This document shows, in pieces, positions 15,520-45,390 of a stretch of 64,000 nt of DNA (its first letter is position 1; the number at the start of each line of letters is the position of its first letter). The stretch is from Haliotis rubra (Eukaryota). The stretch lies in assembly GCF_003918875.1 (NCBI RefSeq), contig NW_025767603.1, positions 186,001 through 250,000 of the forward strand, read 5' to 3'. The notes beneath the pieces were generated by a model. That model saw only the letters and a list, made by a program, of their open reading frames with translations, was not told the origin of the DNA and searched no databases. The position numbers and the translations under genes are program-made.

Positions 15520-17613
15520 CTCGGGTCGGCGGTTCGAGTTTGAACCCCGATCCTGAAACACCTGGGAGTAGCCTGACAATGCAGGGTTCCCCTGGTGTAC
15601 ACGGGTAGACCTCGGTGCATCGAGGTGATCGGTAGCTCCGTCACACTCAACGGCCTCTTGGCCAGGGCGTCGATAGACATCAGGCCAAGACCTGAGCTAA
15701 CAGCGCCGGGGATCTGCTCCATATGGGGGGCCAAAGCCCAGGTCGGCGCTTGTCCGATCCCCAGTCCCGAGACACATGGGAGTAGCCTGGCAATGCAGGC
15801 TTCCCCTGGTGTACACAGGTAGACCTCTGAGCGTCGAGGTGATCGGCAGCTCGGTAGCTCTGTCACACTCAACAGCCTCCTGGCCTAGACATCAGGCCGA
15901 GACCTGAGCTATTGGCGCCCGGGATCTGCGCCGTACCAGGGCCGAAGCCCGGGTCGGTGCTAGTCCCCAGGTTCAGAGAGTCCGAACCCTGGTCCCGAGA
16001 CACATGGGTGTAGCCTGGCAATGCAGGCTTCCCCTGGTGTACACGGGTAGACCTAGGAGCGTCGAGGTGATCGGCAGCTCTGTCACACTCAACAGCCTCC
16101 TGGCCTGGGCGTCGATAGACATCAGGCCGAGGCCTGAGCTACCGGGGACGGGGATCAATGCCGTACCGGGGCCGAAGTCCGGGTCGGTGGTAGTCCCCAG
16201 GTTCAGAACGTCCCCGGAGCTGAAGCTCGTCCCCGGGAGGTCGGACCCTTCCCGGAGCCAGAGCTCGGGTCGGGACCTCCCCCAATTGATGCGCCGGTGC
16301 AACCTCTACCCGTAGACCGGGTACCAATCTCCTTTCGGAGTCTGGAAACCACATCTGAGATAAGAGCGTGCACCGACGATCTCCCGCTGCTGCTATAAGT
16401 AAGAAAGCAATCGTTAGTGTAGCAACATTGTTTGTGGGGGAGGCGTAGGCGGGGGGACGATAAAGGGATTTCCTTAGAAGCCTTTCATCAAAAATTATCT
16501 CCCGCCTGAAGCAGATTAGTGAAAAACATAAAATCTGCATGCTTGAAAGAATGCGCATGAGGAGCAGAAACCCAGGCAAAAGACACAACCTCGGCCACTA
16601 TGAGCCACATGGTGTGTAAACGTATGAAATGTGTATATGTGTAACATAACGCAACATAATGTAACAGAATATTGACGCAAGGGTGCTTATTATGAACATC
16701 CTTGAGCGTCGTGAGTGTCCTCGGCTAAACACCGTCCTGTGGTGGCAGTGTGCATGGCACAACGCACAGGGCTTAAACTGCAACAAACAGAACCATGCCA
16801 GTGTTATTAGCAGGAACTGTGACGCAGCAAACATATAAGTAAATAGCAATAAATAAAACGCACAGGTGATATTTAAATGCTACAAGCTACAGCCATTTAA
16901 ATACTAAACATACAATGCAAAGCAGAAAAAAAGGCTAGCCGCACCTGCGTGTACATACTAGCAGGGAGACTATATAACTATATGTTGTAGATTATCCCTG
17001 ATACTATAGTGAGTAAAGTTGAGTGATACAAAACGAACACTATCAAAAAATTATCAACAACGACTTACCACCAAATTCGCTGAAAAGAGAGAATTTAGGC
17101 AAGCCTACCATATATGCAAACATAATATATGAACTCCCTACTACAAGCTCCAAGATCTAGCAGGAAACCACGATCGCGCGGTCCGCCATTTTGCCTGCCA
17201 CAAGGCTGGAAAACAGAGAACCCACGGCAAAGTTACAACAAAAGATGAATGAGAATATCAACATATGAAGTCCATCTAACGCCCGTGCGTAAAGAAAGGA
17301 ACCATACATACAGATTGAGACTCTCTTACACTCATTGTATCGGTAGGAGAGCAAACTCGAAACGAACACCACGCACGTCTATTCAACAGAACGACAGCAT
17401 GAAAAGTTAGGTACGAGGTAGACGGCGACAGTTACCTGCTCTTGGCTTTAGGGGGTCTGTTGGGGCCCTGTAGGGGTGGTCTCACAAGACAAAACGAGTT
17501 TTTTTGTTTTGTAAATATTTTATTGCAAAATATAGTTACAACTGTCGTAGGATTTAAAATGCATATTTAAATGCTTATATGTACCCCAAGGAGGACTTCT
17601 TCTGAAAAAGAAT
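15520..17613 (-). mobile_element. Truncated DIRS relative (ITR plus 5' part of ORF1)
   Basis: 17150-17613 is homologous to the ITR of the 39.8-kb element and shares its terminus attctttttcagaagaagtcc. The zinc-finger start QFKPCALC at ~16780 matches QFHPCVAC. About 3 internal ~200-240-bp duplications at 15540-16200. Confidence 0.85.
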
Positions 17614-17682
17614 GCTATATATGATGTTTAGCTGTCTGAATGTACTATAAATTTGTATCCTTGATGAGTGTTTCTGTTCCAG

Positions 17683-17869
17683 TTGGACTATAGTTCCTTG
17701 ACAGAAGAGAACTTTTGTGACTTCCTGGAGGACCACTTCAATGACCTCATTCGCTCCGTCTCTCCTCCGGTGTTCTTTGGCCAGCTGCGCAGTGCTCGCG
17801 TCCTCAGTGAAAGTGACTGTGATGAAATTAATAATTTCTACTGTAACCCAACACGAAGATCTCGTGCAA
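17683..17869 (+). CDS. CARD9/CARD11-like CARD-coiled-coil protein, CARD exon A
   Basis: tttctgttccag|TTG ... GCA A|gtgagt. Encodes LDYSSLTEENFCDFLEDHFNDLIRSVSPPVFFGQLRSARVLSESDCDEINNFYCNPTRRSRA, a CARD helix 1-4 pattern (LR..RVLS..D.DEI). Confidence 0.88.
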
Positions 17870-17887
17870 GTGAGTGGCACATATTAA

Positions 17888-18160
17888 TTATCCCCCACAA
17901 CGCGTTTTGCGGGGGGTATTAAAATGGAGTGCGTGCATGCGTCCGTCCGTCCGTGCACATTTGTCTTTTCCGGAGCAGAACTCTAAAACTGTTTCTTCAC
18001 CAAACTTGGCACATATATAGATCTGGTGGTGTACTGGTGCCTTTTGCTAGTTTGGGATTTCTGAATAAAATATTTTTGGCATTTCCATGGCAACAAGTTT
18101 GACTTAGACTGAAATTGGTGATAGTGTTCCTTTCTGGAGCAGAACTTTAAAAACCTTTCA
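17888..18160 (+). mobile_element. HINE-like element, truncated
   Basis: ttatcccc...ggggggtat stem, (GTCC)n, ccggagca/ccaaacttgg/ttccatgg unit shared with 8830-9702. A related fragment lies at ~26375-26620. Confidence 0.65.
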
Positions 18161-18389
18161 AGACTCTCCTTCCACTGTTCTATATACACACCTAAATATT
18201 AACTCGTAGACATAATCATGAAGAGTATTTTGCCATTGTGGGGATATTGATGACTCTGTCTTCTTGTTTTTCTTCATTCTGTGTATCATAAACAGCATCA
18301 ACCTCTCTTGCAACAAATATAGTTCAGTAACACTTGATTTCACTGATATTAGTTTGTTATTTTAATATCATTCTCCATCAATAATTAAT

Positions 18390-18635
18390 GAGTGAGTGAG
18401 TGAGTTTAGTTTTACGCCGCACTCAGCAATATTCCAGCTATATGGTGGCAATCTGTAAATAATCGAGTCTGGACCAGACAATCCAGTCATCAACAGCATG
18501 AGCATCGATCTGTGCAATTGGGAACCGATGACATATGTCAACCAAGTCAGCGAGCCTGACCACCTGATCCCGTTCGTCGCCTCATACGACAAGCATGGGT
18601 TACTGAAGGCACATTCTAACCTGGACCTTCATGGG
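18390..18635 (-). mobile_element. SINE-like element, family A
   Basis: TSD caataattaat, (GAGT)n tail, homologous to the other copies. Confidence 0.88.
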
Positions 18636-18845
18636 TAGCAATAATTAATAATACCATTTAGCTATGCTTCATTTCACTGATATTAGTCAATAATTACTGA
18701 TATCATTCAGTAGTGCTTGATTTCATATTAATCTGTTATTTGAATAACATTCTCTGTCAACAATCACAGATATCATTCAGTAATGCTTGATGACACTGAT
18801 ATCAGTTTATGCTTGGTACTCACCATGGCTGTTTGCTTGCTTCAG

Positions 18846-18974
18846 GAACTTTCCTCAATATACTGCTGACAAAGGGACTAGATGGGTTCAAGCAGTTTAT
18901 GGAGTGTTTGGAATATGAGTACCCGCATGTGTTCCAGAAGATCACAAACAGAATTGCTAAATCACCCCCCTCAG
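18846..18974 (+). CDS. CARD-CC protein, CARD exon B
   Basis: ttgcttcag|GA ... TCA G|gtgagt, phase 1-1. RTFLNILLTKGLDGFKQFMECLEYEYPHVFQKITNR closely parallels the recalled CARD11 segment [36 protein letters not shown]. Confidence 0.9.
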
Positions 18975-19209
18975 GTGAGTCAGTTCTGTCTTGTCATACG
19001 TCAACTGGGTCCCTAGCTCTCCCCCTCCACCAACCTCTCCCAACCCAACACACCCTCATCTCACCTCTTTCATTGCAAGTAGTATAAGATAACTCACAGT
19101 CATGGATGACAGAGTTTGGGCACAAGGGTTTGCTTAGATATTTTGAGTTTAACATTGGTTCAAGTTTAGCTGAAAATCCGGGCAGGGAGTGTAAGGCTGG
19201 GCACAGGGT

Positions 19210-21960
19210 CCATGGATGGCTGAGGGTGGGTGCCTAGCGTATGGATGATGGAGGGTGGGTGCCTAGCGTATGGATGATGGAGGGTGGGTGACTAGCGTAT
19301 GGATGATGGAGGGTGGGTGCCTAGTGTATGGATGATGGAGGGTGGGTGCCTAGCGTATGGATGATGGAGGGTGGGTGCCTAGCGTGATGGTATGGATGAT
19401 GGAGGGTGGGTGCCTAGCGTATGGATGATGGAGGGTGGATGCCTAGCGTATGGATGATGGAGGGTGGGTGAAGAGTCTGGTGCTGGGTGAGTGTGGGTGC
19501 CCAGCATATTGATGATTTAGGGTGGGTGAATGGTCTGGTGCTGGGTGAGGGTGGGTGCCCAGCATATTGATGATTGAGGGTGGGTGAAAGGGTCTGGTTA
19601 TGGGTGAGGGTGGGTGCCTAGTGTATGGATGATTGAGGGTGGACAAAGGGTCAGTGCATGGGTGAGGGTGGGTGCCCAGCATATTGATGATTGAGGGTGG
19701 GTGAAGGGTCTGGTTATGGGTGAGGGTGGGTGCCTAGTGTATGGATGATTGAGGGTGGACAAAGGGTCAGTGCATGGGTGAGGGTGGGTGACTAGCAAAT
19801 GGATGATTGAGGGTGGGTGAAGGGTCTGGTTATGGGTGAGGGTGGGTGCCCAGCATATTGATGATTGAGGGTGGGTGAAGGGTCTGGTTATGGGTGAGGG
19901 TGGGTGCCCAGCATATGGATGATTGAGGGTGGGTGAAGGGTCTGGTGCTAGGTGAGGGTGGGTGCTCAGCATATGGATGATTGAGGATGGGTGAAGGGTC
20001 TGGTGCTGGGTGAGGGTGGGTGCCTAGCATATGGGGGGTTGGTGAAGGGTCTGGTTATGGGTGAGGGTGGGTGCCCAGCATATGGATGATTGAGGGTGGG
20101 TGAAGGGTCTGGTGCTGGGTGAGTGTGGGTGCCCAGCATAAGGATGATTGAGGATGGGTGAAGGGCCTGGTGCTGGGTGAGGGTGGGTGCCCAGCATATG
20201 GATGATTGAGGATGGGTGAAGGGTCTGGTGCTGGGTGAGTGTGGGTGCCCAGCATATGGATGACTGAGGGGGTGGGTGAAGGACCTGGTGCTGGGTGAGT
20301 GTGGGTGCCCAGCATAAGGATGATTGAGGATGGGTGAAGGGTCTGGTGCTGGGTGAGGGTGGGTGCCCAGCATATGGATGATTGAGGGTGGGTGAAGGGT
20401 CTGGTGATGGGTGAGGGTGGGTGCCCAGCATATGGATGATTGAGGGTGGGTGAAGGGTCTGGTGCTGGGTGAGGGTGGGTGGGTCTGGTGCTGGGTGAGG
20501 GTGGGTGCAGCTGCATATGGATGATTGAGGGTGGGTGAAGGGTCTGGTGATGGGTGAGGGTGGGTGCCCAGCATATGGATGACTGAGGTTGGGTGAAGGG
20601 TCTGGTGCTGGGTGAGGGTGGGTGCCCAGCATATGGATGATTGAGGGTGGGTGAAGGGTCTGGTGCTGGGTGAGTGTGGGTGCCCAGCATATGGATGATT
20701 GAGGATGGGTGAAGGGTCTGGTGCTGGGTGAGGGTGGGTGCCCAGCATATGGATGATTGAGGATGGGTGAAGGGTCTGGTGCTGGGTGAGGGTGGGTGCC
20801 CAGCATATGGATGATTGAGGGTGGGTGAAGGGTCTGGTGCTGGGTGAGGGTGGGTGCCCAGCATATGGATGATTGAGGTGGGTGAAGGGTCTGGTGCTGG
20901 GTGAGGGTGGGTGCCCAGCATATGGATGATTGAGGGTGGGTGACCTGGTGCTCACATGCTGAGATGACCTGGTGCTGATGGATGCCAACATTGGATGGGT
21001 GGGTGAAAAGTGCTGGGTGAGGGTGGCTGCCCAGCATATGGTGAGGGTGGGTGCCCAGCATATGGATGATTGAGGTGGGTGCCCAGGGATGAAGGTGGGT
21101 CTGGTGCTGGGTGGGTGAGAATGATTGAGGGTGGGTGCCCAGCCAACAGGTAAGGTGAAAGGACCTGGTGCTAGGTGAGGAGGGTGGAGTGCCCAACATA
21201 TGGATGATTGAGGGTGGGTGAAGGGTCTGGTGCTGGGTGAGTGTGGGTGCCCAGCATAAGGATGATTGAGGATGGGTGAAAGGACCTGGTGCTGGGTGAG
21301 GTGGGTGCCCATGGATGATTGAGGTGGGTGAAGGGTCTGGTGCTGGGTGAGGATGATTGAGGATGGGTGAAGGGTCTGGTGCTGGGTGAGGTGGGTGCCC
21401 AGCATAAGGATGATTGAGGATGGGTGAAGGGTCTGGTGCTGGGTGAGGGTGGGTGCCCAGCATATGGATGATTGAGGATGGGTGAAGGGTCTGGTGCTGG
21501 GTGAGGGTGGGTGCCCAGCATATGGATGATTGAGGGTGGGTGAAGGGTCTGGTGCTGGGTGAGGGTGGGTGCCCAGCATATGGATGATTGAGGGTGGGTG
21601 AAGGACCTGGTGCTGGGTGAGGGTGGGTGCCCAGCATATGGATGATTGAGGGTGGGTGAAGGGTCTGGTGATGGGTGAGGGTGGGTGCTCAGCATATGGA
21701 TGATTGAGGGTGGGTGAAGAGTCTGCACCGTGAGGGTTGAGGGTGGGTGCCCAGCATATGGATGATTGAGGGTGGGTGAAGGGTCTGCACCATGAGGGTT
21801 GAGGGTGGGTGCCCAGCATGTAGATGATTGAGGGTGGGTGAAGGATCTGCACCGTGAGGGTTGAGGGTGGGTGCCCAGCATATGGATGATTGAGGGTGGG
21901 TGAAGGGTCTGCACCGTGAGGGTTGAGGGTGGGTGCCCAGCATGTAGATGATTGAGGGTT
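19210..21960 (+). repeat. G-rich 29/58-bp minisatellite
   Basis: The 29-mer gagggtgggtgcctagcgtatggatgatg changes into the 58-mer gggtgagggtgggtgcccagcatatggatgattgagggtgggtgaagggtctggtgct. Confidence 0.97.
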
Positions 21961-21964
21961 CTAT

Positions 21965-22230
21965 TAGTGTTTCCCCCAAGATCTAAAAGGGCAGGGTCAC
22001 AGAATTTCAAAATGGGCATGCAATTACAGAATTCCAAGTATTATGTTAAGTTATCCATACCTATGGGATTCTTAAAGACTCAAAGAGCACAGTTATTTCT
22101 TTTTACTGCAACATGAAATAAAAACTAAAAACAACCAAGTGTTAATATCAATTATTGTATTAAAAGAAGGGCAGGGCTCAAATAAAAAGGCAGGGCCTGC
22201 ACCCTGCTAGCAATGCCTAAGGGAAACACA
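21965..22230. mobile_element. hAT-like MITE
   Basis: tagtgtttccc ... gggaaacaca short TIRs with gggcaggg subterminal repeats. Confidence 0.5.
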
Positions 22231-22555
22231 AACTATTGATGGGTGAGTATGGCTGGGGGCATTGAGTATAAATGGTGGTGTGAAGAGAAGGCCAAGGGCT
22301 ATATTTGGAAGAGTCAACTATTCATGGTACAAAGTGCATAGTAATTCCAGAATATTGATGAATCACTATTGGTGGATTCACAGTGTGAGACCATGCCTGA
22401 GTACATTTTCCTGACATTCTACTGTTGACCTTGTAACCGACATTTTGTGTCAACTGGCAAACATAGGAGGAAGTTGTATTCAGCTTTGTTCCTCAAATAT
22501 GTCTCATTTGATGTGTCAGAGGAAGAAGCTACTAAGTTAAGTAATAATCTATTAA

Positions 22556-23968
22556 CCCATTCAACACCGCAGGCCGAATAATCGGCCACAACGTTATGAG
22601 TCCCCAGACACCGGAGGCCGATTAATCGGCCAGGCAGTAGTCACGTCAAAATGAGACATAATTTTAGGAACCTACCTGACTTTTGATTCATATATCAAAT
22701 CTATCACATTTCACAATGTCTGAAAACACTTATTAAATTTCAATTTATCATATATTATCAGCAGAATTAAAATTATAAACTATTTTTCGCAATGTTATTG
22801 AAAACAACGATTCTCGGACACATGCTTCGGCAGCGGGTCCACAATAACATTGTCAAAGAGCAAAGTAACGATGTTTCGAGGAAATTATTAAATAAATTGA
22901 ATAAACTAATGAATAAAATCAACAACAGCATTCATAAAAGTTGTCAAACGTACATATAAAATTACTATTTCCATCTTTTGTGCGATCATGTAATGCAAGT
23001 CAAGTCACTGACAAGTGTCATCTCGGCACTCGCTGCCTCAATCTTCACGCTCGGACACGATGTTTAATGCGAAAATACATACATGAAGCATTTTTGTCAC
23101 AGGTCATAACCTAGCACGATACATCCAATAAGTTCCATAATTTACGTATAGGTAGCGATTTCTTGCTTAATATGTTCAGAATAGCATTATTTTACCCAAA
23201 ACTTTTGCCCAAATCTAAAAGTTTTCGTTTACGAGGACGGTATCCATTGCCGTAATATGATTGGCTGCCTTAGGTCACGTGTCTGATTTTGACCAATCAC
23301 AACCCTTATAGCAGACTGTGGCGAAAAAGCGTCATTAGAAACCAATCTTTATCCAATAAAATCGCTTCTTACAACTGTGAAAATACTCTTGGCAAGGGTA
23401 CAGTGATATTGTTGATGTTCAGAGCTTTTCGAACGATGCCCGACATCAAGCGATTTGCAGCAGCATGTTATTCATCTGAAGCTTCAAAGCGGATGTATTT
23501 CCAGTTGTTATGTTATTTTACCGGCGGAAAGCCACAGATATCGGGAAATAGGCGACCATACATATTGTTTAAGAAATCTTTTTCTAATAATTTTCTGATT
23601 ACGTAAAAATGAAAATATAAAAGAAAAAGGCACGGGGATGTTATGACATGTCACAAATGGAAAAAATCGCCATAGTTTTTGCTCCTTTTGTGGTTTATCT
23701 GGACGTTATAAATGTAAGCTTGCATTTTCATTCAAAAATAAATTTATTTAAGTTGTAGTTGTATTATTTGAATAATATTATAAAAATAAACTTCATATTT
23801 ATCAACAGTAGGATTAGATCTTTTAAATGGTGTATGGGATGTAGTAGCAATAACGTTGTACAAGCTTATAATTTCCTTCATAAACATAGGCTTCATCTAT
23901 GACCTCAGAGTCTCTGGGAACTCGGTGTCATGGCAGTAAATGCCTCTGGTTGACTGGTGTTGAAAGAG
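22556..23968. mobile_element. Non-autonomous piggyBac-type element
   Basis: TTAA|cccattcaacacc ... ggtgttgaaagag|TTAA, i.e. TTAA TSD with imperfect TIRs. No transposase. Confidence 0.75.
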
Positions 23969-24061
23969 TTAATATATATTTCTAACAAACTGGGTTTGGG
24001 TATCTGCTGAAAAAGTAGAACAAATGTGAGATTCTCACTTTTTATGCTATCAAATGCATGT

Positions 24062-25703
24062 GTACCCATGTCTCAGTCCCTTGACTTGAGTACCCATGTC
24101 TCAGTACCTGGAGTTGAGTACCCATGTCTCAGTACCTGGAGTTGAGTACCCATGTCTCAGTACCAGGAGTTGAGTACCCATGTCTCAGTACCAGGAGTTG
24201 AGTACCCATGTCTCAGTACCTAGAGTTGGGTACCCATGTCTCAGTACCAGGAGTTGAGTACCCATGTCTCAGTACCTGGAGTTGAGTACCCATGTCTCAG
24301 TCCCTTGACTTGAGTACCCATGTCTCAGTACCAGGAGTTGAGTACCCATGTCTCAGTACCTGGAGTTGAGTACCCATGTCTCAGTACCTGGAGTTGGGTA
24401 CCCATGTCTCAGTACCAGGAGTTGAGTACCCATGTCTCAGTACCTGGAGTTGAGTACCCATGTCTCAGTACCAGGAGTTGAGTACCATGTCTCAGTACCT
24501 TGAGTTGAGTACCCATGTCTCAGTACCTAGAGTTGAGTACCCATGTCCCAGTACCTGGAGTTGAGTACCCATGTCTCAGTACCAGGAGTTGAGTACCCAT
24601 GTCTCAGTACCAGGAGTTGAGTACCCATGTCTCAGTACCTAGAGTTGGGTACCCATGTCTCAGTACCAGGAGTTGAGTACCCATGTCTCAGTACCAGGAG
24701 TTGAGTACCCATGTCTCAGTACCAGGAGTTGAGTACCCATGTCTCAGTCCCTTGACTTGAGTACCCATGTCTCAGTACCAGGAGTTGAGTACCCATATCC
24801 TAGTACCTGGAGTTGTGTACCCATGTCTCAGTACCAGGAGTTGAGTACCCATGTCTCAGTACCAGGAGTTGAGTTGAGTACCCATGTCTCAGTACCTGGA
24901 GTTGTGTACCCATGTCTCAGTACTTGGAGTTGGGTACCCATGTCTCAGTACCTCGAGTTGAGTACCCATGTCTCAGTACCTGGAGTTGAGTAGTACCCAT
25001 GTCATGTCTCAGTACCAGGAGTTGAGTACCCATGTCTCCATGTGCCTCAGTACTCGAGTTGAGTACCCATGGCTCAGTTCCTGGAGTTGAGTACCCATGT
25101 CTCAGTACCTGGAGATGTCTCAGTTGAGTACCCATGTCCCAGTACCTGGAGTTGAGTACCCATGTCTCAGTACCTGGAGTTGAGTACCCATGTCCCAGTA
25201 CCAGGAGTTGAGTACCCATGTCTCAGTACCTGGAGTTGAGTACCCATGTCTCAGTACCTGGAGTTGAGTACCCATGTCCCAGTACCTGGAGTTGAGTACC
25301 CATGTTTCAGTACCAGGAGTTGAGTACCCATGTCCCAGTACCTGGAGTTGAGTACCCATGTCTCAGTACCTGGAGTTGAGTACCCATGTACCCATGTTTC
25401 AGTACCAGGAGTTGAGTACCCATGTCTCAGTACCTGGAGTTGAGTACCCATGTCTCAGTACCTGGAGTTGAGTACCCATGTTTCAGTACCTGGAGTTGAG
25501 TACCCATGTTTCAGTACCTGGAGTTGAGTACCCATGTCTCAGTACCTGGAGTTGAGTACCCATGTCTCAGTACCTGGAGTTGAGTACCCATGTCTCAGTA
25601 CCTGGAGTTGAGTACCCATGTCTCAGTACCAGGAGTTGAGTACCCATGTCTCAGTACCTGGAGTTGAGTACCCATGTCTCAGTACCTGGTGTTGAGTACC
25701 CAT
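24062..25703. repeat. 28-bp minisatellite
   Basis: (gtacccatgtctcagtacctggagttga)n. Confidence 0.97.
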
Positions 25704-25834
25704 CAGCTACCAGCTTCACTATGCTGCCCTGCACCACTTCTAACTAATTCTGACTTCAAAACTAGAAAAACATTGACTACCTCGAAAAACATTTTTGAAA
25801 AAAAGATTGTGTTCAATAAAATGTGCATACTCAT

Positions 25835-26103
25835 GTCGTTGCATCAGGTCATGAACCCTGAACACTTGTGATGTTGTTGCATCAGGTCATGGACCCTGAA
25901 CACTTGTGATGTTGTTGCATCAGGTCATGGACCCTGAACACTTGTGTTGTGTTGTTGCTTCAGGTCATGGACCCTGCACACTTGTGATGTTGTTGCTTCA
26001 GGTCATGGACCCTGCACACTTGTGATGTTGTTGCTTCAGGTCATGGACCCTGGACACTTGTGATGTTGTTGCTTCAGGTCATGGACCCTGAACACTTGTG
26101 ATG
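25835..26103. repeat. 38-bp minisatellite (~7 copies)
   Basis: (gttgcwtcaggtcatggaccctgaacacttgtgatgtt)n. Confidence 0.95.
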
Positions 26104-29634: not shown

Positions 29635-29800
29635 GGGGCAGTGGGGTAGATTAGTGGTTAAAGCGTTGGCTCGTCACGCCCAAGACCCAGGTTCGATTCC
29701 ACACATTGGTACAATGCGTGAAGCCCATTTCTGGTGTCCCCCGCCGTGATATTGCTGGAATATTGCAGAAAGCGGCATAAAACTATACTCACTCACTCAC
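29635..29800 (+). mobile_element. tRNA-derived SINE, family B
   Basis: Pol III A box (tagattagtgg) and B box (ggttcgattcc), (ACTC)n tail, 13-bp TSD tctaatcatgtga. Confidence 0.9.
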
Positions 29801-31251: not shown

Positions 31252-32268
31252 TTTTTGTCCCCCGCCGCAATGCGGAACAGGGGACTATGTATTCAGCGGC
31301 TTCTGTCCGTCCGTCTGTATGTCCCGATTCTTGTTAACGCGATATCTCATGAACTGTTGTACCCAATGTCTTCAACTTTGGTGACAGTCTACATTGGGGC
31401 ATTACACAGACACCAGTCAATTTGGGTGACCTTGATCTTATTTTTAAGGTCACCATGACACTTTGACCACTTTTGAAACTCTTGTTAATGCGATATCTCA
31501 TGAACTGTTCTACCCAATGTCTTCAAATTTGGTGACAGCCTACAATGGGGGATTGCCCAGACACCAGTTGATTTGGGTGACCTTGACCTTATCTTCAAGG
31601 TCACCACAACACTTTTCAAACTGTTGTTAATGTGATATCTCATGCACTGTTGTACCCAATGTCTTCAAATTTGGTGACAGCCTACATTTGGGGATTACTC
31701 AGACACCAGTCGATTTGGGTGACCTTGACCTTATCTTCAAGGTCACCACAACACTGAACACTTTTCAAACTGTTGTTAATGTGATATCTCATGCACTGTT
31801 GAATCCAGTGTCTTCAAATTTGGTGACAGCCTACATTTGGGGGTTACTCAGACACCAGTCGATTTGGGTGACCTTGACCTTATCTTCAAGGTCACCACGA
31901 CATTTTTACCAGTTTTCAAACTGTTGTTAACGTGATATCTCATGCATTGTTGTATCCAATATCTTCAACTTTGATGACAGCTTACATTGGGGAATTATGC
32001 AGACACCAGTCGATTTGGGTGACATTGACCTTATCTTCAAGGTTACGACCCTTTGACCACTTTTCAAACTCTTGTTAACGTGATATCACATAAAACATTG
32101 CACCCGATGTCTTCATTTGTGTCGACAGCTTACATTGGGTGATTATGCAGACACCAGTCATTTCAGGCTTCTTGTATGTGACCAAAACATAAAAAGTAAT
32201 AAATATGTTATAAATATTCCATTCTTTAGCGGCGGGGGACATTGCCATATCAGTGGCAAACACTTGTT
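31252..32268 (+). mobile_element. HINE-like element with ~125-bp internal tandem array
   Basis: subTIRs tgtcccccgccgc / gcggcgggggaca, gtcc/gtct microsatellite, ~6-7 units containing gtgaccttgacctt, 3' hairpin ttgcca-tatcag-tggcaa. Confidence 0.8.
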
Positions 32269-32923
32269 CGTGCTGTTTCCACCCTCCATGTAATAGATGA
32301 CTAGTTCTTAAATAATTTTCAAATTTCTAACTTTCTTACTTGAAGAAAGAAAACATTTTTCCATGATCACCCCCAAAATAGTTGTGATATTTGTTGGCAA
32401 CATGCCTCTTATTTTGATGTATGATATTTTCATGCCTTTCCTAAATTTTAACAAACTCCACCCCACCCAAAATTATCTCTGATTATTGTTGGATATATAT
32501 TTGTGAATATTTTCTTAATGGATATCCACATTCATCTTTATACAAAGTGTATTTAAGATAGAAACCAAAGAAAAAAATTGTGTTATTATTTTTTACCATA
32601 CATGTAACCGTAATGTTGATAGCGCAAGAGTAGCTATTTGCCAATATTTGTAGTCTGTCGTACAGACCCTGCAGCAAATATATCCAAGAAAGCCCACGCA
32701 AGTCTAGAAAATGTGGCAAGTCTAGATTTCCTCAGCTTCAGGGTCTCTGAAAATGAAGAAAGTCTCAGGGCTCCTTTTCATTATATTTTTTTTTAAATAT
32801 GTTCATTTCAGAGACTAGTTGTTAGTCTACAATATTTGCTACTTGTATTAACATTCTATATTGTCATCGGCTATGGACCATTGACATGCACTGAAATGTT
32901 TCTTCAACGTTATGTCCCTACAG

Positions 32924-33090
32924 GCTATGAGCGGCATGATGAAGGTCGTATCTCCCAGAACCTGGAGGAGTTTTCTCGGATGGGGTTCCGCGTGGCGAAC
33001 CTCAACAACCAGCGGAATGATCTGTTCAACCAGCTCGAGGAGCTGCAGAGCATGCTGGAGTATGCGGAGAAGGAGAACAAAGACTTGGAG
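32924..33090 (+). CDS. CARD-CC protein, start of coiled coil
   Basis: tccctacag|GC ... TTG GAG|gtgaca, phase 1 to 0. GYERHDEGRISQNLEEFSRMGFRVANLNNQRNDLFNQLEELQSMLEYAEKENKDLE is heptad-rich, with GC-rich coding-like composition. Confidence 0.85.
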
Positions 33091-33749
33091 GTGACAACTT
33101 TTAACAAACGTCTTTTAATGTATTCCACAATTAACTTTTGTGTTAATTACATCCAGTTTTAGCTTCAATTGACCTCTTTTGCTTCTTCAACTGGTTATTA
33201 CTTCATTGGCCTGATAAGCCTTTGTACTTTGTTTATTTTTCAACCATTTTTGGCCTTGATTGACCAAGAGAATCAACTTCTTTCGCTTCTTCAACCAGTT
33301 AGTGTTTCATTGACCTGGAAAAACTTCCAAATGTTTTCTTCAGACAATGTTAATTTTGTTCAGCTAGGAGAGTCTTTCTCTCTTGCTTCCCTGTCAGGAT
33401 TCTGGGGCCATGCAGGTTCCCACTTCCAAGTTCTTGTGTTCACATGCCGTAAAAAAATTCCATGTCCCCTCATATTTGTTTCCCCCCTTTTTGTACTCCA
33501 GTTTAGAATAGGCACCTGGCTCCCCATGCTTTTCTTCACATTGGCATGTTAAAAATAACAAGTAGACCCCCCATTCCCTTGTGTGCATAATCTAAGGACA
33601 GAACAGGTCCGATGTACCCAATGCTAAGAGCAAATAAACTCAAGATAAGTTATCACAATGTGTTGTGTGGCTGAGGTTTTACTCACCTGCCTGTCTTCCA
33701 ATAACTGCTCTGTATTTCACAGTATTTCCTGATATGCCATGAGATAAAT

Positions 33750-33880
33750 GGGGTTGATGGGGTAGCCTAGTGGTTAAAGTGTTCGCTTGTCACACCGAAG
33801 GCCCAGGTTCGATTCCCCACATGGGTTCAATGTGTGAAGCCCATTTCTGGTGTCCCCGTCTGTGATGTTGCTAGAATATA
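33750..33880 (+). mobile_element. tRNA-derived SINE, family B, 3'-truncated
   Basis: Homologous to 29635-29800. Abuts the start of the 43-bp array. Confidence 0.85.
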
Positions 33881-33884
33881 GCAT

Positions 33885-36800
33885 GATATCACTGGGCTGT
33901 ATATCCTGATCTGCTCTGTTTCAGCCTAAGATAACAGTACTGTATTCCCTGGTTTGCTGTATCTTGGCATGATATCACTAGGCTGTATTCCCTGGTTTGT
34001 TGTGTTTCAGCATGAGATAACAGCACTGTATTCCCTGGTTTGTTGTGTTTCAGCCTGAGATAACAGTACTGTATTACCTGGTTTGCTGTATCTCGGCATG
34101 ATATCACTAGGCTGTATTCCCTGGTTTGTTGTGTTTCAGCGTGAGATAACAGTACTTTATTCCCTGGTTTGCTGTATCTCGGCATGATATCACTAGGCTG
34201 TATTCCCTGGTTTGTTGTGTTTCAGCCTGAGATAACAGTACTGTATTCCCTGGTTTGTTGTGTTTCAGCGTGAGATAACAGTACTGTATTCCCTGGTTTG
34301 CTGTATCTTGGCATGATATTACTAGGCTGTATTCCCTGGTTTGTTGTGTTTCAGCATGAGATAACAGTACTGTATACCCTGGTTTGCTATATCTCGGCAT
34401 GATATTACTAGGCTGTATTCCCTGGTTTGTTGTGTTTCAGCGTGAGATAACAGTACTGTATTCCCTGGTTTGCTGTATCTTGGCATGATATCACTAGGCT
34501 GTATTCCCTGGTTTGTTGTGTTTCAGCATGAGATAACAGTACTGTATGCCCTGGTTTGCTGTATCTTGGCATGATATCACTAGGCTGTATTCCCTGGTTT
34601 GTTGTGTTTCAGCGTGAGATAACAGTACTGTATTCCCTGGTTTGCTGTATCTTGGCATGATATCACTAGGCTGTATTCCTGGTTTGTTGTGTTTCAGCGT
34701 GAGATAACAGTACTGTATGCCCTGGTTTGCTGTATCTTGGCATGATATCACTAGGCTGTATTCCCTGGTTTGTTGTGTTTCAGCGTGAGATAACAGTACT
34801 GTATTCCCTGGTTTGCTGTATCTTGGCATGATATCACTAGGCTGTATTCCCTGGTTTGTTGTGTTTCAGCGTGAGATAACAGTACTGTATTCCCTGGTTT
34901 GCTGTATCTTGGCATGATATCACTAGGCTGTATTCCCTTGGTTTGTTGTGTTTCAGCGTGAGATAACAGTACTGTATTCCCTGGTTTGCTGTATCTCGGC
35001 ATGATATCACTAGGCTGTATTCCCTGGTTTGTTGTGTTTCAGCATGAGATAACAGTACTGTATTCCCTGGTTTGCTGTATCTTGGCATGATATTACTAGG
35101 CTGTATTCCCTGGTTTGTTGTGTTTCAGCGTGAGATAACAGTACTGTATTCCCTGGTTTGCTATATCTCGGCATGATATTACTAGGCTGTATTCCCTGGT
35201 TTGTTGTGTTTCAGCGTGAGATAACAGTACTGTATGCCCTGGTTTGCTGTATCTTGGCATGATATCACTAGGCTGTATTCCCTGGTTTGTTGTGTTTCAG
35301 CATGAGATAACAGTACTGTATGCCCTGGTTTGCTGTATCTTGGCATGATATCACTAGGCTGTATTCCCTGGTTTGTTGTGTTTCAGCGTGAGATAACAGT
35401 ACTGTATGCCCTGGTTTGCTGTATCTTGGCATGATATCACTAGGCTGTATTCCCTGGTTTGTTGTGTTTCAGCGTGAGATAACAGTACTGTATGCCCTGG
35501 TTTGCTGTATCTTGGCATGATATCACTAGGCTGTATTCCCTGGTTTGTTGTGTTTCAGCGTGAGATAACAGTACTGTATTCCCTGGTTTGCTGTATCTTG
35601 GCATGATATCACTAGGCTGTATTCCCTGGTTTGTTGTGTTTCAGCGTGAGATAACAGTACTGTATTCCCTGGTTTGCTGTATCTTGGCATGATATTACTA
35701 GGCTGTATTCCCTGGTTTGTTGTGTTTCAGCGTGAGATAACAGTACTGTATTCCCTGGTTTGTTGGGTTTCAGCCTGAGATAACAGTACTGTATTCCCTG
35801 GTTTGCTGTATCTTGGCATGATATTACTAGGCTGTATTCCCTGGTTTGTTGTGTTTCAGCATGAGATAACAGTACTGTATACCCTGGTTTGCTATATCTC
35901 GGCATGATATTACTAGGCTGTATTCCCTGGTTTGTTGTGTTTCAGCGTGAGATAACAGTACTGTATGCCCTGGTTTGCTGTATCTTGGCATGATATCACT
36001 AGGCTGTATTCCCTGGTTTGTTGTGTTTCAGCGTGAGATAACAGTACTGTATTCCCTGGTTTGCTGTATCTTGGCATGATATTACTAGGCTGTATTCCCT
36101 GGTTTGTTGTGTTTCAGCGTGAGATAACAGTACTGTATGCCCTGGTTTGCTGTATCTTGGCATGATATCACTAGGCTGTATTCCCTGGTTTGTTGTGTTT
36201 CAGCATGAGATAACAGTACTGTATGCCCTGGTTTGCTGTATCTTGGCATGATATCACTAGGCTGTATTCCCTGGTTTGTTGTGTTTCAGCGTGAGATAAC
36301 AGTACTGTATTCCCTGGTTTGCTGTATCTTGGCATGATATTACTAGGCTGTATTCCCTGGTTTGTTGTGTTTCAGCGTGAGATAACAGTACTGTATGCCC
36401 TGGTTTGCTGTATCTTGGCATGATATCACTAGGCTGTATTCCCTGGTTTGTTGTGTTTCAGCATGAGATAACAGTACTGTATGCCCTGGTTTGCTGTATC
36501 TTGGCATGATATCACTAGGCTGTATTCCCTGGTTTGTTGTGTTTCAGCGTGAGATAACAGTACTGTATGCCCTGGTTTGCTGTATCTTGGCATGATATCA
36601 CTAGGCTGTATTCCCTGGTTTGTTGTGTTTCAGCGTGAGATAACAGTATTGTATTCCCTGGTTTGCTGTATCTTGGCATGATATTACTAGGCTGTATCCC
36701 TGGTTTGTTGTGTTTCAGCGTGAGATAACAGTACTGTATTCCCTGGTTTGCTGTATCTTGGCATGATATTACTAGGCTGTATTCCCTGGTTTGTTGTGTT

Positions 36801-38531
36801 TCAGCGTGAGATAACAGTACTGTATTCCCTGGTTTGCTGTATCTTGGCATGATATTACTAGGCTGTATTCCCTGGTTTGTTGTGTTTCAGCATGAGATAA
36901 CAGTACTGTATTCCCTGGTTTGTTGTGTTTCAGCGTGAGATAACAGTACTGTATTCCCTGGTTTGCTGTATCTCGGCATGATATCACTAGGCTGTATTCC
37001 CTGGTTTGTTGTGTTTCAGCGTGAGATAACAGTACTGTATTCCCTGGTTTGTTGTGTTTCAGCATGAGATAACAGTACTGTATTCCCTGGTTTGCTGTAT
37101 CTTGGCATGATATCACTAGGCTGTATTCCCTGGTTTGTTGTGTTTCAGCGTGAGATAACAGTACTGTATTCCCTGGTTTGCTGTATCTTGGCATGATATC
37201 ACTATGCTGTATTCCCTGGTTTGTTGTGTTTCAGCCTGAGATAACAGTACTGTATTCCCTGGTTTGCTGTATCTCGACATGTTATTACTAGGCTGTATCC
37301 CTGGTTTGTTGTGTTTCAGCGTGAGATAACAGTACTGTATTCCCTGGTTTGTTGTGTTTCAGCGTGAGATAACAGTACTGTATTCCCTGGTTTGCTGTAT
37401 CTTGGCATGATATTACTAGGCTGTATTCCCTGGTTTGTTGTGTTTCAGCATGAGATAACAGTACTGTATGCCCTGGTGTGTTGTGTTTCAGCATGAGATA
37501 ACAGTACTGTATGCCCTGGTTTGTTGTGTTTCAGCATGAGATAACAGTACTGTATTCCCTGGTTTGCTGTATCTCGGCATTATATCACTAGGCTGTATTC
37601 CCAGGTTTGTTGTGTTTCAGCGTGAGATAACAGTACTGTATTCCCTGGTTTGTTGTGTTTCAGCATGAGATAACAGTACTGTATTCCCTGGTTTGCTGTA
37701 TCTTGGCATGATATTACTAGGCTGTATTCCCTGGTTTGTTGTGTTTCAGCATGAGATAACAGTACTGTATTCCCTGGTTTGTTGTGTTTCAGCGTGAGAT
37801 AACAGTACTGTATTCCCTGGTTTGCTGTATCTCGGCATGATATTACTAGGCTGTATTCCCTGGTTTGTTGTGTTTCAGCATGAGATAACAGTACTGTATG
37901 CCCTGGTTTGTTGTGTTTCAGCATGAGATAACAGTACTGTTTTCCCTGGTTTGCTGTATCTCGGCATGATATTACTAGGCTGTATTCCCTGGTTTCTTGT
38001 GTTTCAGCATGAGATAACAGTACTGTATTCCCTGGTTTGTTGTGTTTCAGCGTGAGATAACAGTACTGTATTCCCTGGTTTGCTGTATCTCGGCATGATA
38101 TTACTAGGCTGTATTCCCTGGTTTGTTGTGTTTCAGCGTGAGATAACAGTACTGTATGCCCTGGTTTGCTGTATCTTGGCATGATATCACTAGGCTGTAT
38201 TCCCTGGTTTGTTGTGTTTCAGCGTGAGATAACAGTACTGTATTCCCTGGTTTGCTGTATCTATGCATGATATCACTAGGCTGTATTCCCTGGTTTGTTG
38301 TGTTTCAGCGTGAGATAACAGTACTGTATTCCCTGGTTTGCTGTATCTCTGCATGATATTACTAGGCTGTATTCCCTGGTTTGTTGTGTTTCAGCATGAG
38401 ATAACAGTACTTTATTCCCTGGTTTGTTGTGTTTCAGCATGAGATAACGGTACTGTATTCCTTGGTTTGTTGTGTTTCAGCGTGAGATAACAGTACTTTA
38501 TTCCCTTGTTTGTTGTGTTTCAGCGTGAGAT
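33885..38531 (+). repeat. 43-bp A/B minisatellite (86-bp higher-order unit) containing the splice acceptor of exon 38524
   Basis: A = ctgtattccctggtttgttgtgtttcagcgtgagataacagta; B = ctgtattccctggtttgctgtatcttggcatgatatcactagg. About 108 units by length. Confidence 0.97.
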
Positions 38532-38626
38532 TGCCTCACTGAGACCTTATGCTATGGACAACCAGCAACTGTTGGAGAAACAGCTTGAAGCTGACAAGGA
38601 GATTCGCAACCTCAAGGATGAAAACA
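38524..38626 (+). CDS. CARD-CC protein, coiled-coil exon
   Basis: tgtgtttcag|CGT ... AAC A|gtgagt, phase 0 to 1. REIASLRPYAMDNQQLLEKQLEADKEIRNLKDEN; LKDEN resembles the K(D/E)(D/E)N motif of CARD9/11 coiled coils. Not in the ORF track. Confidence 0.82.
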
Positions 38627-38813
38627 GTGAGTAGGGTACTAAAATTGTGTAAAAACTTGAGTGGAAATCACATGTCTCTCTGTTAAACTAAAGCTGTGAG
38701 TCATAAGAAAAGGAATGGAAGAAAATAACTTAATCTTTTGTTTCCTTTGTCTCTGGTTGCACTGATAGATAGCCTGAGTTTCCTGGTGCTGAGAGTCTGA
38801 ACTTGCATTGCAG

Positions 38814-38972
38814 GAGAATTCATGAGGAAGAACATCCAGTATCGAGATGATGTGGAGCGCCAGATGAGCCGCATTGACGAGCTGCTCGTAGACAGAGAGG
38901 ACCTGGAGAACAACCTGAAAGAGAGAAACAATGAGCTGGAGAGAATGAACCAATCACAGGATGTGCTGATAG
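38814..38972 (+). CDS. CARD-CC protein, coiled-coil exon
   Basis: cattgcag|GA ... ATA G|gtatgt, phase 1-1. REFMRKNIQYRDDVERQMSRIDELLVDREDLENNLKERNNELERMNQSQDVLI. Confidence 0.85.
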
Positions 38973-39510
38973 GTATGTTTACTTGGTACAGAGAGAATGA
39001 ACCAATCACAGGATGTGCTGATAGGTTTGTTTACTTGGTACAGAGAGAATGAACCAATCACAGGATGTGCTGATAGGTATGTTTACTTGGTACAGAGAGA
39101 ATGAACCAATCACAGGATGTGCTGATAGGTATGTTTACTTGGTACAGAGAGAATGAACCAATCACAGGATGTGCTGATAGGTATGTTTACTTGGTACAGA
39201 GAGAATGAACCAATCACAGGATGTGCTGATAGGTATGTTTACTTGGTACAGAGAGAATGAACCAATCACAGGATGTGCTGATAGGTATGTTTACTTGGTA
39301 CAGAGAGAATGAACCAATCACAGGATGTGCTGATAGGTATGTTTACTTGGTACAGAGAGAATGAACCAATCACAGGATGTGCTGATAGGTATGTTTACTT
39401 GGTACAGAGAGAATGAACCAATCACAGGATGTGCTGATAGGTATGTTTACTTGGTACAGAGAGAATGAATCAATGAGTATTACTTGGTACAGAGAGAATG
39501 AACCAATCAC
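38939..39510 (+). repeat. 52-bp tandem repeat (~10.5 copies) containing the exon end and splice donor of exon 38814-38972
   Basis: (gagagaatgaaccaatcacaggatgtgctgataggtatgtttacttggtaca)n. Confidence 0.97.
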
Positions 39511-39653
39511 TGTCCCACTAAAGAATATTGTACACAAATGGAGTGCAGCATGCATAGCCTTTACCTAGAAGAGCTCACTGAGTAAGTCTTCCTCTTAACC
39601 TCAGTAGTGCTTAACCAAAGTCAGTTTCTAACTTTGTTTGTTACTTGTTACAG

Positions 39654-39733
39654 AGAGGTTTGAAGAGGAGAGAAAGAAATCCCAGCGACTTATCAACATA
39701 GCAACCCGTAGAGAAAGACACACTGATGACAAT
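39654..39733 (+). CDS. CARD-CC protein exon
   Basis: ttgttacag|AG ... AAT|gtaggc, phase 1 to 0. ERFEEERKKSQRLINIATRRERHTDDN. Confidence 0.8.
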
Positions 39734-39797
39734 GTAGGCATTTCTACTTTGTGTACAGGCAATATGGATCAATGTTATTTGTGTTGCAGCATCGGTT

Positions 39798-40394
39798 ATT
39801 CTTTTTCAGAAGAAGTCCTCCTTGGGGTACTTATAAGCATTAAAATGTCCATTTTAAAAACCTACGACAGTTGTAACTATATTTCAATAAAAATATTTAC
39901 AAAACGAAAAAACACGTTCTGCATTATGAGACCACCCCTACAGAGCCCCCGCGGGGCCCCCTACCGGCAAGAGCAGGTAACTCTCGCACCTCACTTTTCA
40001 TGCTGTCGTCTTACAAGAGAGACGTGCGTGTCGTTCATTGATGAAAATGAGTGCTAAAGAATCAATTAATGTATGTATGGTTCCTCTTTTCTCTCTCAGA
40101 CGGGCGCTAGATGGAATTGTAGGTTGATTTTTTCATTCATGATTGTTGTAACTTAGTCGGACAGGCTCCATTTTCCAGCCAGGTGGCAGGCAAGATGGCG
40201 GTCGGTTTAACTTCCTTCTGTCCTACGGTTGTAACTTTTTTGAGTTACATCGCTAGGGTGGTAGGGTATTTCAGCGATGTGTGGTGAGTTGGGTAAGTTT
40301 TTTCATATGTTTTTTACGCTGTATATGTTACGCAGGAAGCTTGCATTTTCGCCTCTTGTTCATGATACATGTTAAAGGGTTAAAACTGCCTTAG
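39798..40394 (+). repeat. DIRS left inverted terminal repeat
   Basis: Reverse complement of 45391-45982 with few differences (aagtcctccttggggtac...aaaactgccttag). Confidence 0.95.
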
Positions 40395-40506
40395 CTTTTC
40401 ACATAGGGTTTATCGCCCGTGCTTATTATGTTTTACTTGTGTTGCATATATGTGTGTATTTTAGACTGTACATCAGTTTCCATTAAAATGGTTCTGTTTG
40501 TTACAG

Positions 40507-42325: not shown

Positions 42326-42342
42326 GCATTCCTCCGGAGCCC

Positions 42343-45290: not shown

Positions 45291-45390
45291 GCCTTGTCGC
45301 TGATTTACTCGGTGTTTTATACTGGTGTCGGGTCTATTCTCCCCTATTTTGCACTGGTGAAGGTATGTGGTGGCGGTTTTTATTTCCGTT

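What the first reader, a model, noticed from the sequence alone, without database searches (positions are those of the whole stretch)
17150..40394. Inverted DIRS ends bracket a phase-symmetric 825-nt exon block containing the CARD: circRNA or CARD-skipping geometry
Seen in sequence: the minus-strand DIRS end stops at 17613, 69 nt before the acceptor at 17683. The plus-strand left ITR starts at 39798, 64 nt after the donor at 39734. The two are reverse-complementary, roughly 85% by eye over the terminal ~150 bp and homologous over ~450 bp. The six enclosed exons total 187+129+167+103+159+80 = 825 nt, or 275 codons, and begin and end in phase 0. Established: inverted repeats flanking exons promote back-splicing. 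Inference: back-splicing would give a stop-free circle encoding the CARD plus part of the coiled coil, and skipping would give an in-frame CARD-less protein. The better-matching right ITR (45391-45982) would compete for the same left ITR, making a possible switch. The same geometry could seed a genomic inversion.
Basis: partly seen in the sequence, partly recalled or inferred. Interest (0 to 1): 0.7.

Follow-up and report, generated by a model that had tools for sequence, protein, structure and literature searches.

The report
Inverted retrotransposon ends flanking CARD exons
Two recently inserted jumping-gene copies lie in opposite directions in two introns of an abalone immune-signalling gene and bracket six exons exactly as described, but they are absent from related abalone and every transcript seen is normally spliced, so this looks like ordinary transposon clutter rather than a working RNA-circle or exon-skipping switch.

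Summary
A minus-strand DIRS-like end stops at 17613, 69 nt before the acceptor at 17683. A plus-strand element starts at 39798, 64 nt after the donor at 39734. The two arms are reverse-complementary: about 91% over the first 150 nt and 75% over 440 nt. The six enclosed exons total 825 nt, start and end in phase 0 and carry the whole CARD.

The gene is Haliotis rubra CARD10-like (XP_046553753.1). That independent model places the block at residues 19-293.

Nothing suggests the geometry is used.
- Both insertions are missing from the orthologous genes of H. asinina and H. rufescens. H. asinina shows a clean empty site for element 2.
- Transcript contigs show only linear E4-E5-E6-E7-E8 splicing.
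- All annotated isoforms in three species keep the CARD. The alternative isoform skips a different exon.
- Arm B's own partner is 98.5% identical over 598 nt and lies in the same intron, so it pairs far more strongly than arm A.
- At least ten other inverted-repeat pairs bracket exons in this window.
- The longest perfect match between the arms is 33 nt, so an inversion is unlikely.

A rare circRNA could not be tested, because the runs were available only as assembled contigs.

The parts
172..225 (+). Coding part of exon 1 (ATG at 172, 18 codons, donor GT at 226, ends in phase 0)
   Evidence: residues 1-18 of XP_046553753.1 map here
15425..17613 (-). Element 1: a truncated DIRS-like copy of about 2.2 kb (left ITR, a gag-like remnant and a 228-nt internal repeat). 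It has no second ITR in the window.
   Evidence: All own-genome copies end at 17613 and the repeated part starts near 15425, with at least 7526 first-look candidates. Weak gag-like tblastn match at 16239-16571. It is absent from the H. asinina and H. rufescens orthologues.
17183..17613 (-). Arm A: the ITR of element 1, which ends 69 nt before the E2 acceptor
17683..17869 (+). Exon 2, 187 nt, N-terminal half of the CARD, enters in phase 0
   Evidence: Pfam CARD positions 2-49, E 9e-5; residues 19-80 of XP_046553753.1
18846..18974 (+). Exon 3, 129 nt, C-terminal half of the CARD
   Evidence: Pfam CARD positions 52-84
32924..33090 (+). Exon 4, 167 nt, start of the coiled coil
   Evidence: the loose end of the RNA contigs before E5 matches its 3' end
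38524..38626 (+). Exon 5, 103 nt
   Evidence: RNA contig joint 38626>38814
38814..38972 (+). Exon 6, 159 nt. Its 3' end and donor are copied in the 52-nt array at 38939-39474.
   Evidence: RNA contig joints 38626>38814 and 38972>39654
39654..39733 (+). Exon 7, 80 nt, leaves in phase 0
   Evidence: In the RNA contigs the loose end behind 39733 equals the start of exon 8
39798..46007 (+). Element 2: a 6.2-kb DIRS-like retroelement with an RT domain. Its long frame is broken by stops. It is a young insertion in intron 7.
   Evidence: RVT_1 at E 1e-20 in 42259-43404. ITRs 98.5% alike. Clean empty site in H. asinina at L004 54075|54077 with no target duplication. DNA contigs of two other samples leave the window's sequence at 39787/39798 at single-copy depth.
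39798..40394 (+). Arm B: the left ITR of element 2, which starts 64 nt after the E7 donor
45391..45982 (+). Arm C: the right ITR of element 2, B's own and much stronger partner, in the same intron
48024..48185 (+). Exon 8, 162 nt, phase 0 at both ends
61731..61973 (.). One arm of another repeat family in the intron between exons 57308-57679 and 62293-62421. It is inverted relative to 18377-18636 (intron 2) and 7468-7702 (intron 1), which gives rival intron pairings in the same pre-mRNA.

Best explanation
Two independent, lineage-specific insertions of DIRS-like retroelements landed in opposite orientation in intron 1 and intron 7 of the Haliotis rubra CARD10-like (CARD plus coiled-coil) gene. 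Element 1 is a truncated copy of about 2.2 kb. Element 2 is a young 6.2-kb copy with near-identical ITRs. Their ends happen to bracket exons 2-7. The 825-nt, phase-0/phase-0 make-up of that block is an older property of the gene, shared with species that lack the insertions. The pre-mRNA is spliced linearly. In the nascent RNA, arm B should pair mainly with its own right ITR, looping out the element's interior and helping ordinary removal of intron 7. A-B pairing can therefore give, at most, a minor by-product circle or skipped form. Shown: the geometry, the exon model, linear transcripts, absence of both insertions in relatives, and the relative pairing strengths. Inferred: that B-C pairing wins in vivo and that any circle is rare and without function.
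For: Geometry and arithmetic.

Gene model: E2 alone retrieved XP_046553753.1 [Haliotis rubra], and its residues 19-293 equal the block.

Linear splicing: RNA contigs from two runs show E4-E5-E6-E7-E8.

Isoforms: X1 and X2 in H. rubra, H. asinina and H. rufescens all carry the CARD. X2 lacks residues of about 478-600, which is exon 57308-57679.

Orthologous loci: L003 and L004 have the same exon order and a 275-residue block, but no match to either element. The empty site in H. asinina is exact. Homology upstream of E2 resumes just past A's tip. Intron 7 is 8290 nt here, 2473 nt in H. rufescens and 1153 nt in H. asinina.

Age: ITR divergence of 1.5% is far below the flank divergence of 10-20% to those species.

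Pairing: B-C is -1126 kcal/mol and A-B is -493 kcal/mol.

Commonness: 11 of the 19 inverted pairs in the window enclose exons. H. rufescens has its own unrelated inverted pairs between introns 1 and 7, up to 275 nt at 93%, and H. asinina has none. The ITR family has over a thousand first-look candidates in the 1.38-Gb genome.

Literature: competition among multiple complementary sequences affects circularization (PMC5042038). Young transposons create young, species-specific circRNAs (PMC8516420).
Against: - No raw RNA reads, RNase R data or ribo-depleted data could be laid. Contigs drop rare forms, so a low-level back-splice or skip junction is not excluded.
- The RNA contigs differ from the window at about 2% of exon positions. 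They may come from an individual or sister species that lacks element 2, so they do not show how an allele carrying the insertion is spliced.
- The 33-nt perfect and 150-nt roughly 91% pairing at the tips, within 70 nt of both splice sites, exceeds the 30-40 nt found sufficient in mammalian minigenes (PMC5814467, PMC5042038).
- Long flanking introns (17.5 and 8.3 kb) and an exon-2 start are typical of circRNA loci.
- That both ends lie within 70 nt of exon borders is improbable for random insertion and remains unexplained.
Confidence: 0.75

Rival explanations
1. A-B pairing drives appreciable back-splicing of exons 2-7, giving a stop-free 825-nt circle that encodes the CARD and part of the coiled coil. 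Alternatively it drives skipping of the block, giving a CARD-less and possibly dominant-negative protein. B-C pairing would act as a regulated switch.
For: The geometry is favourable: arms 69 and 64 nt from the splice sites, a 33-nt perfect tip and about 91% over 150 nt. The block is phase-symmetric and stop-free with in-frame Met codons. The flanking introns are long. A CARD-less isoform exists in human CARD14 and is described there as unable to induce NF-kB and possibly dominant-negative (PMC6168666). Young TE pairs do create new circRNAs (PMC8516420).
Against: Only linear transcripts were seen. No CARD-less isoform is annotated in three species. Arm B's intron-internal partner is far stronger and nearer. 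Intron 1 would have to stay unspliced while 22 kb more are transcribed. Both insertions are absent from relatives, so nothing has been selected. Nothing points to a factor that would toggle B-C against A-B.
Confidence: 0.08
2. The insertions matter, but not through A-B pairing. Element 2 could disturb the carrying allele through the acceptor-like run at its very start (TTCTTTTTCAG|AAG, 39799-39809, 76 nt after the E7 donor, reaching a stop 8 codons later). It could also act through the 598-bp B-C double-stranded stem (editing, slowed splicing) or through internal termination signals. The result would be an allele with reduced or truncated CARD-CC output.
For: The acceptor-like motif is at the ITR tip. 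The stem is near-perfect over 598 bp. The insertion appears absent from two other DNA samples, so it may segregate. DIRS-tip sequences occur in RNA-like contigs.
Against: The RefSeq model from this assembly joins E7 to E8 normally. No chimeric E7-ITR contig was seen. Most intronic insertions are silent.
Confidence: 0.1
3. Element 2 at this place is an assembly artefact: a repeat copy spliced into the contig rather than a real insertion.
For: Contigs from two other DNA data sets leave the window's sequence at the left junction. No second contig of this locus exists in the assembly for comparison.
Against: Both junctions are clean. They abut sequence that is contiguous in H. asinina to the base, as expected of a real integration. 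The two ITRs differ at 9 positions, as in a real aged copy. The other samples differ from the window by 3-7% in unique intron DNA, so they are other haplotypes or taxa.
Confidence: 0.03

Closest known systems
Reverse-complementary repeat pairs in flanking introns that promote exon circularization (inverted Alu pairs in mammals, RCMs in worms and flies)
   Same: Inverted copies of one transposon family lie in the two introns that flank a set of internal exons, close to canonical splice sites. The flanking introns are long and the block starts at exon 2. The tip pairing exceeds the 30-40 nt reported as sufficient (PMC5814467, PMC5042038).
   Different: No back-splice junction has been observed. 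The repeats are DIRS-like ITRs of two diverged subfamilies (75% overall). One arm has a near-perfect partner inside its own intron. The organism is a mollusc, for which I found no study of repeat-driven circularization (PMC11764893 only catalogues circRNAs in H. discus hannai muscle).
Young, species-specific TE dimers associated with species-specific circRNA loci (Gruhl et al. 2021, PMC8516420)
   Same: Both arms are recent, lineage-specific insertions that are absent from congeners. H. rufescens has independently acquired other inverted pairs around the same block.
   Different: That work starts from observed circRNAs. Here only the repeat landscape is known.
DIRS1-like tyrosine-recombinase retrotransposons
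   Same: Inverted terminal repeats of about 600 nt; a reverse transcriptase; a right end that extends beyond the shared ITR; integration without target-site duplication; an inverted copy of the end-to-end junction in a related copy; a weak methyltransferase-like match.
   Different: No tyrosine recombinase was detected in this copy or in two relatives. No internal complementary region was found in this copy. The long frame is broken by stops, so this is probably a defective or non-autonomous copy.
CARD-CC family (CARD9/10/11/14) and the CARD-less CARD14 isoform CARMA2cl
   Same: An N-terminal CARD most similar to the CARD11 and CARD9 CARDs, followed by a long heptad-rich region. The sources name the protein CARD10-like or CARD11-like. 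Removing the CARD exons in frame would mimic CARMA2cl (PMC6168666). CARD-CC homologues were found only in invertebrates that have Bcl10, and mollusks have Bcl10 (PMC5978004).
   Different: No PDZ, SH3 or GUK domain was found by Pfam at E<=0.01. No CARD-less isoform is annotated in Haliotis.

Membership tests
Repeat-driven circRNA locus | Reverse-complementary sequences in both introns flanking the circularized exons | tested here: met
   A 17183-17613 against B 39798-40201: 75.5% over 440 columns, about 91% over the first 150 nt, 33-nt perfect tip
Repeat-driven circRNA locus | Canonical acceptor and donor at the would-be back-splice boundaries | tested here: met
   AG before 17683 and GT at 39734. 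The donor at 39734 is used in RNA contigs. Both boundaries are supported by the RefSeq model.
Repeat-driven circRNA locus | Observed back-splice junction reads (39733>17683) | not testable with these tools
   Only Logan contigs were available and the stretch limit of 6 kb cannot span 22 kb. The contigs show only the linear continuation into exon 8.
Repeat-driven circRNA locus | Cross-intron pairing not outcompeted by pairing within one intron | tested here: not met
   B-C in the same intron: 98.5% over 598 nt, -1126 kcal/mol. A-B: -493 kcal/mol.
DIRS-like retrotransposon | Inverted terminal repeats | tested here: met
   39798-40394 and 45391-45982, 98.5% complementary
DIRS-like retrotransposon | Reverse transcriptase | tested here: met
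   Pfam RVT_1 at E 1e-20 in 42259-43404
DIRS-like retrotransposon | Tyrosine recombinase instead of integrase | tested here: inconclusive
   No Pfam or NCBIfam hit in element 2 or in relatives L001 and L002. The copies look degenerate, and the profiles may be too distant.
DIRS-like retrotransposon | Internal complementary region (inverted copy of the joined ends) | tested here: inconclusive
   None found in element 2. A related copy, L001:1875-1975, carries the inverted left tip abutting the inverted right tip.
DIRS-like retrotransposon | Integration without target-site duplication | tested here: met
   The H. asinina empty site aligns to window 39797|46008 with no duplicated bases
CARD-CC (CARD9/10/11/14-like) | N-terminal CARD of the CARD9/11 type | tested here: met
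   Pfam CARD at E 1e-13 on XP_046553753.1 residues 31-115. The best solved relatives are the CARD11 CARD (E 1e-9) and the CARD9 CARD (E 4.5e-4).
CARD-CC (CARD9/10/11/14-like) | Long coiled coil directly after the CARD | not tested
   Exons 4-10 read as heptad-rich, charged sequence. No coiled-coil predictor was run.
CARD-CC (CARD9/10/11/14-like) | Binding to Bcl10 and formation of a CBM complex | not testable with these tools
   Needs experiment

The most novel reading that the evidence does not exclude
In H. rubra individuals that carry both insertions, A-B pairing yields a substantial exon 2-7 circle with an endless reading frame for CARD plus coiled coil, or a CARD-less dominant-negative isoform. 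Because element 2 seems to be missing from other sampled genomes, it would form a natural presence/absence allelic series that tunes CARD-CC/Bcl10 signalling in a mollusc.
Probability: 0.05. Interest if true: 0.6.

Novelty: new member of a known kind. Interest (0 to 1): 0.2.

Why it matters
If the pairing worked, it would be a datable case of a transposon insertion creating a circular or CARD-less product of an innate-immunity scaffold in a farmed mollusc, testable by comparing carriers with non-carriers. On present evidence it illustrates the opposite point. In repeat-rich introns, inverted transposon pairs around exon blocks arise readily and repeatedly; H. rufescens has its own unrelated pairs around the same block. 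Phase-symmetric blocks are common in this gene. Geometry alone is therefore weak evidence of function.

Tried and rejected
1. Second contig (haplotig) of the locus in the assembly, to compare alleles: only the window itself matched.
2. Tyrosine recombinase: Pfam at relaxed thresholds, NCBIfam and solved-structure searches on the ORFs of element 2, and Pfam on the ORFs of two relatives, found none. The only hit was a weak one to a flavivirus NS5 methyltransferase (E 0.01).
3. Internal complementary region in element 2: short-word blast and a pattern search with 3 mismatches found none.
4. A partner ITR for arm A: none in the window, so A is not tied up within intron 1.
5. Single exons against solved structures: E2 alone gave only E 0.45 to CARD11. 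The full RefSeq protein settled the match.
6. RNA evidence for back-splicing: the one run search gave only coded runs held as contigs.
E2 was searched by reference and the public protein it found was used instead.
9. Rejected reading, conserved and selected geometry: both elements are absent from two congeners.
10. Rejected reading, inversion seed: the longest perfect match is only 33 nt.


Full report
**1. What is in the sequence**

The + strand at 17553-17613 reads as the reverse complement of 39798-39858.

- A repeat search finds gap-free inverted blocks of 61 nt (93%), 71 nt (83%) and 60 nt (75%) between 17451-17613 and 39798-39960.
- blastn joins them into one alignment, 17183-17613 against 39798-40201, at 75.5% over 440 columns with E 1e-77.
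- The first 150 nt from the tips are about 91% alike. The longest perfect run is 33 nt, at the very tips.

Arm B is the left inverted terminal repeat of a complete-length element. Its right repeat, 45391-45982, is 98.5% identical over 598 nt, with a 295-nt perfect run. The distances to the splice sites, 69 nt and 64 nt, are as stated.

**2. The two elements**

*Element 2*
- It carries a reverse-transcriptase domain (RVT_1, E 1e-20, 42259-43404).
- One long frame from 40465 to 44760 is interrupted by stops.
- An ORF gives a weak methyltransferase-like match.
- No tyrosine recombinase was detected.
- Its real right end is 46007, not 45982. The next 25-34 nt recur at many loci, and the H. asinina empty site aligns to 39797|46008 with no duplicated bases.
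- A related copy elsewhere in the genome carries the inverted left tip abutting the inverted right tip, which is the DIRS hallmark. Element 2 itself has no such region.

*Element 1*
- Only about 2.2 kb (15425-17613) is present: an ITR, a gag-like remnant and a 228-nt internal repeat.
- Every genomic relative ends exactly at 17613, so this is a true terminus.
- It belongs to a different, very abundant subfamily: at least 7526 first-look candidates, with the best copies 91-92% alike.
- It has no second ITR in the window.

"DIRS-like" is therefore a fair label for both. The copies look defective.

**3. The gene and the exon block**

All phases and split codons check out: the sum is 825 nt, the intron phases are 0,1,1,0,1,1,0,0, there are no stops, and there are seven in-frame Met codons. 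E2 matches Pfam CARD positions 2-49 and E3 matches positions 52-84.

E2 alone, searched by reference, retrieved a 949-residue public protein. It is XP_046553753.1, [quoted passage not shown].
- Its residues 1-18, 19-293 and 294 onward map on E1, E2-E7 and E8.
- Six further exons map up to 62421, and the rest of the gene lies beyond the window.
- So an independent model gives exactly 275 codons for the block, with no extra exon.
- Its CARD is closest to the CARD11 and CARD9 CARDs among solved structures.
- No MAGUK domains reach E 0.01 in Pfam.

**4. Transcripts**

The run search returned only coded runs held as contigs. Laid on 38500-40400:
- Two RNA-like runs each give one contig of about 1.59 kb, with joints 38626>38814 and 38972>39654.
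- The loose end before E5 equals the 3' end of E4. The loose end behind 39733 equals the first 30 nt of E8.
- The 687 contig letters ahead of E5 fit E2+E3+E4 (483 nt) plus about 204 nt of first exon.
- The 52-nt array between E6 and E7 is spliced out.

Two caveats apply. Contigs cannot reveal rare back-splice or skip forms. These contigs also differ from the window at about 2% of exon positions, so they may come from another haplotype or a sister taxon.

The word search with the full protein lists isoforms X1 and X2 in H. rubra, H. asinina and H. rufescens. All carry the CARD. X2 lacks residues of about 478-600, which is exon 57308-57679. No CARD-less isoform of about 674 residues appears, although it would fall within the length range searched.

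**5. Age and conservation**

I fetched the orthologous loci of H. rufescens (L003) and H. asinina (L004).
- Both have the same exon order and a 275-residue block. Neither has any match to element 1 or element 2.
- In H. asinina the flanks of element 2 are adjacent (54075|54077), which is an exact empty site. Homology upstream of E2 begins just past A's tip.
- Intron 7 is 8290 nt here, 2473 nt in H. rufescens and 1153 nt in H. asinina.
- Single-copy-depth DNA contigs from two other samples cross 39466-39798, or end at 39787, and then continue into sequence unlike the ITR. That suggests empty sites there too.
- ITR divergence is 1.5%, against 10-20% for the flanking intron between species.

The phase-symmetric block is therefore ancestral. 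The inverted-repeat geometry is recent and confined to the H. rubra lineage or to some of its haplotypes.

**6. How special is the geometry?**

- The window holds 19 inverted pairs at E<=1e-6, and 11 of them enclose at least one exon.
- A/B ranks third by score. It is level with 18377-18636 / 61731-61973 (83% over 260 nt) and close to 7468-7702 / 61731-61957. Both arms of those pairs lie in introns of the same gene.
- H. rufescens has independently acquired other inverted pairs between introns 1 and 7, up to 275 nt at 93%. H. asinina has none.
- Four of the first eight introns are phase 0, so several blocks are symmetric.
- One feature is not explained by chance: both transposon tips lie within 70 nt of exon borders.

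**7. Mechanism**

By the mammalian minigene standard, 30-40 nt of complementarity can suffice, and competition among several complementary sequences modulates circularization (PMC5814467, PMC5042038). A-B meets the minimum.

Against it:
- B's partner C lies 5 kb away in the same intron and pairs with -1126 kcal/mol, against -493 kcal/mol for A-B.
- It is established knowledge that intron-internal pairing favours linear splicing.
- A sits in intron 1, which would have to remain unspliced while 22 kb more are transcribed.

The most likely state is linear splicing, with at most a trace of circle as a by-product. That fits the view that young transposons create young, mostly incidental circRNAs (PMC8516420).

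An inversion by homologous recombination is unlikely with a 33-nt maximal perfect match and 75% identity (inference from established knowledge).

A CARD-less product would be interesting by analogy with human CARMA2cl (PMC6168666), but nothing shows that it exists here.

**8. Verdict**

This is an ordinary instance of a known kind of arrangement, and interest is low unless carrier-specific junctions are found.

Noticed in passing
window 38939-39474; L003 ~40794-41498; L004 ~53554-53687: The 52-nt array that copies the 3' end of exon 6 plus its donor is also present in H. rufescens and H. asinina, with different copy numbers. It is therefore older than those species splits. RNA contigs and the RefSeq model splice it out.
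   Followed up: partly
window 39799-39809: The left ITR of element 2 begins with a strong acceptor-like run (TTCTTTTTCAG|AAG) 76 nt after the exon 7 donor. If used, the frame would hit a stop 8 codons later. No transcript showing its use was seen.
   Followed up: partly
window 57308-57679: This 372-nt exon (residues of about 478-601) is skipped in annotated isoform X2. The same X1/X2 pair is annotated in H. asinina and H. rufescens, so this is the gene's conserved alternative splicing event.
   Followed up: partly
window 33880-38531 (intron 4): The 43/86-nt satellite makes intron 4 5.4 kb here, against about 1.2 kb in H. rufescens and about 1.7 kb in H. asinina. The expansion is lineage-specific.
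   Followed up: partly
L004 34062-53292: Intron 5 is 187 nt in the window and about 360 nt in H. rufescens, but about 19 kb in H. asinina. That points to a large lineage-specific insertion there.
   Followed up: no
window 19212-21959 (intron 3): A G-rich 29/58-nt minisatellite with GGGTGGGTG motifs lies on the sense strand, with GC 0.59 and GC skew +0.6. The long minus-strand ORFs listed there are artefacts of the repeat.
   Followed up: no
window 39798-39944, RNA-like run X1 record 3: A 554-nt contig carries the ITR tip in both orientations 36 nt apart, like a transcribed copy of a DIRS end-to-end junction. Members of this family appear to be expressed.
   Followed up: no
L003 8952-9224 / 43134-43406 and 2290-2554 / 43781-44047: H. 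rufescens has its own unrelated inverted-repeat pairs between intron 1 and intron 7 of the orthologous gene, up to 275 nt at 93%.
   Followed up: partly
window 17613 and 39798: Both transposon tips lie within 70 nt of exon borders. This is unlikely for random insertion into introns of 17.5 kb and about 2.1 kb. A target preference of these elements for sequence near splice sites was not tested.
   Followed up: no
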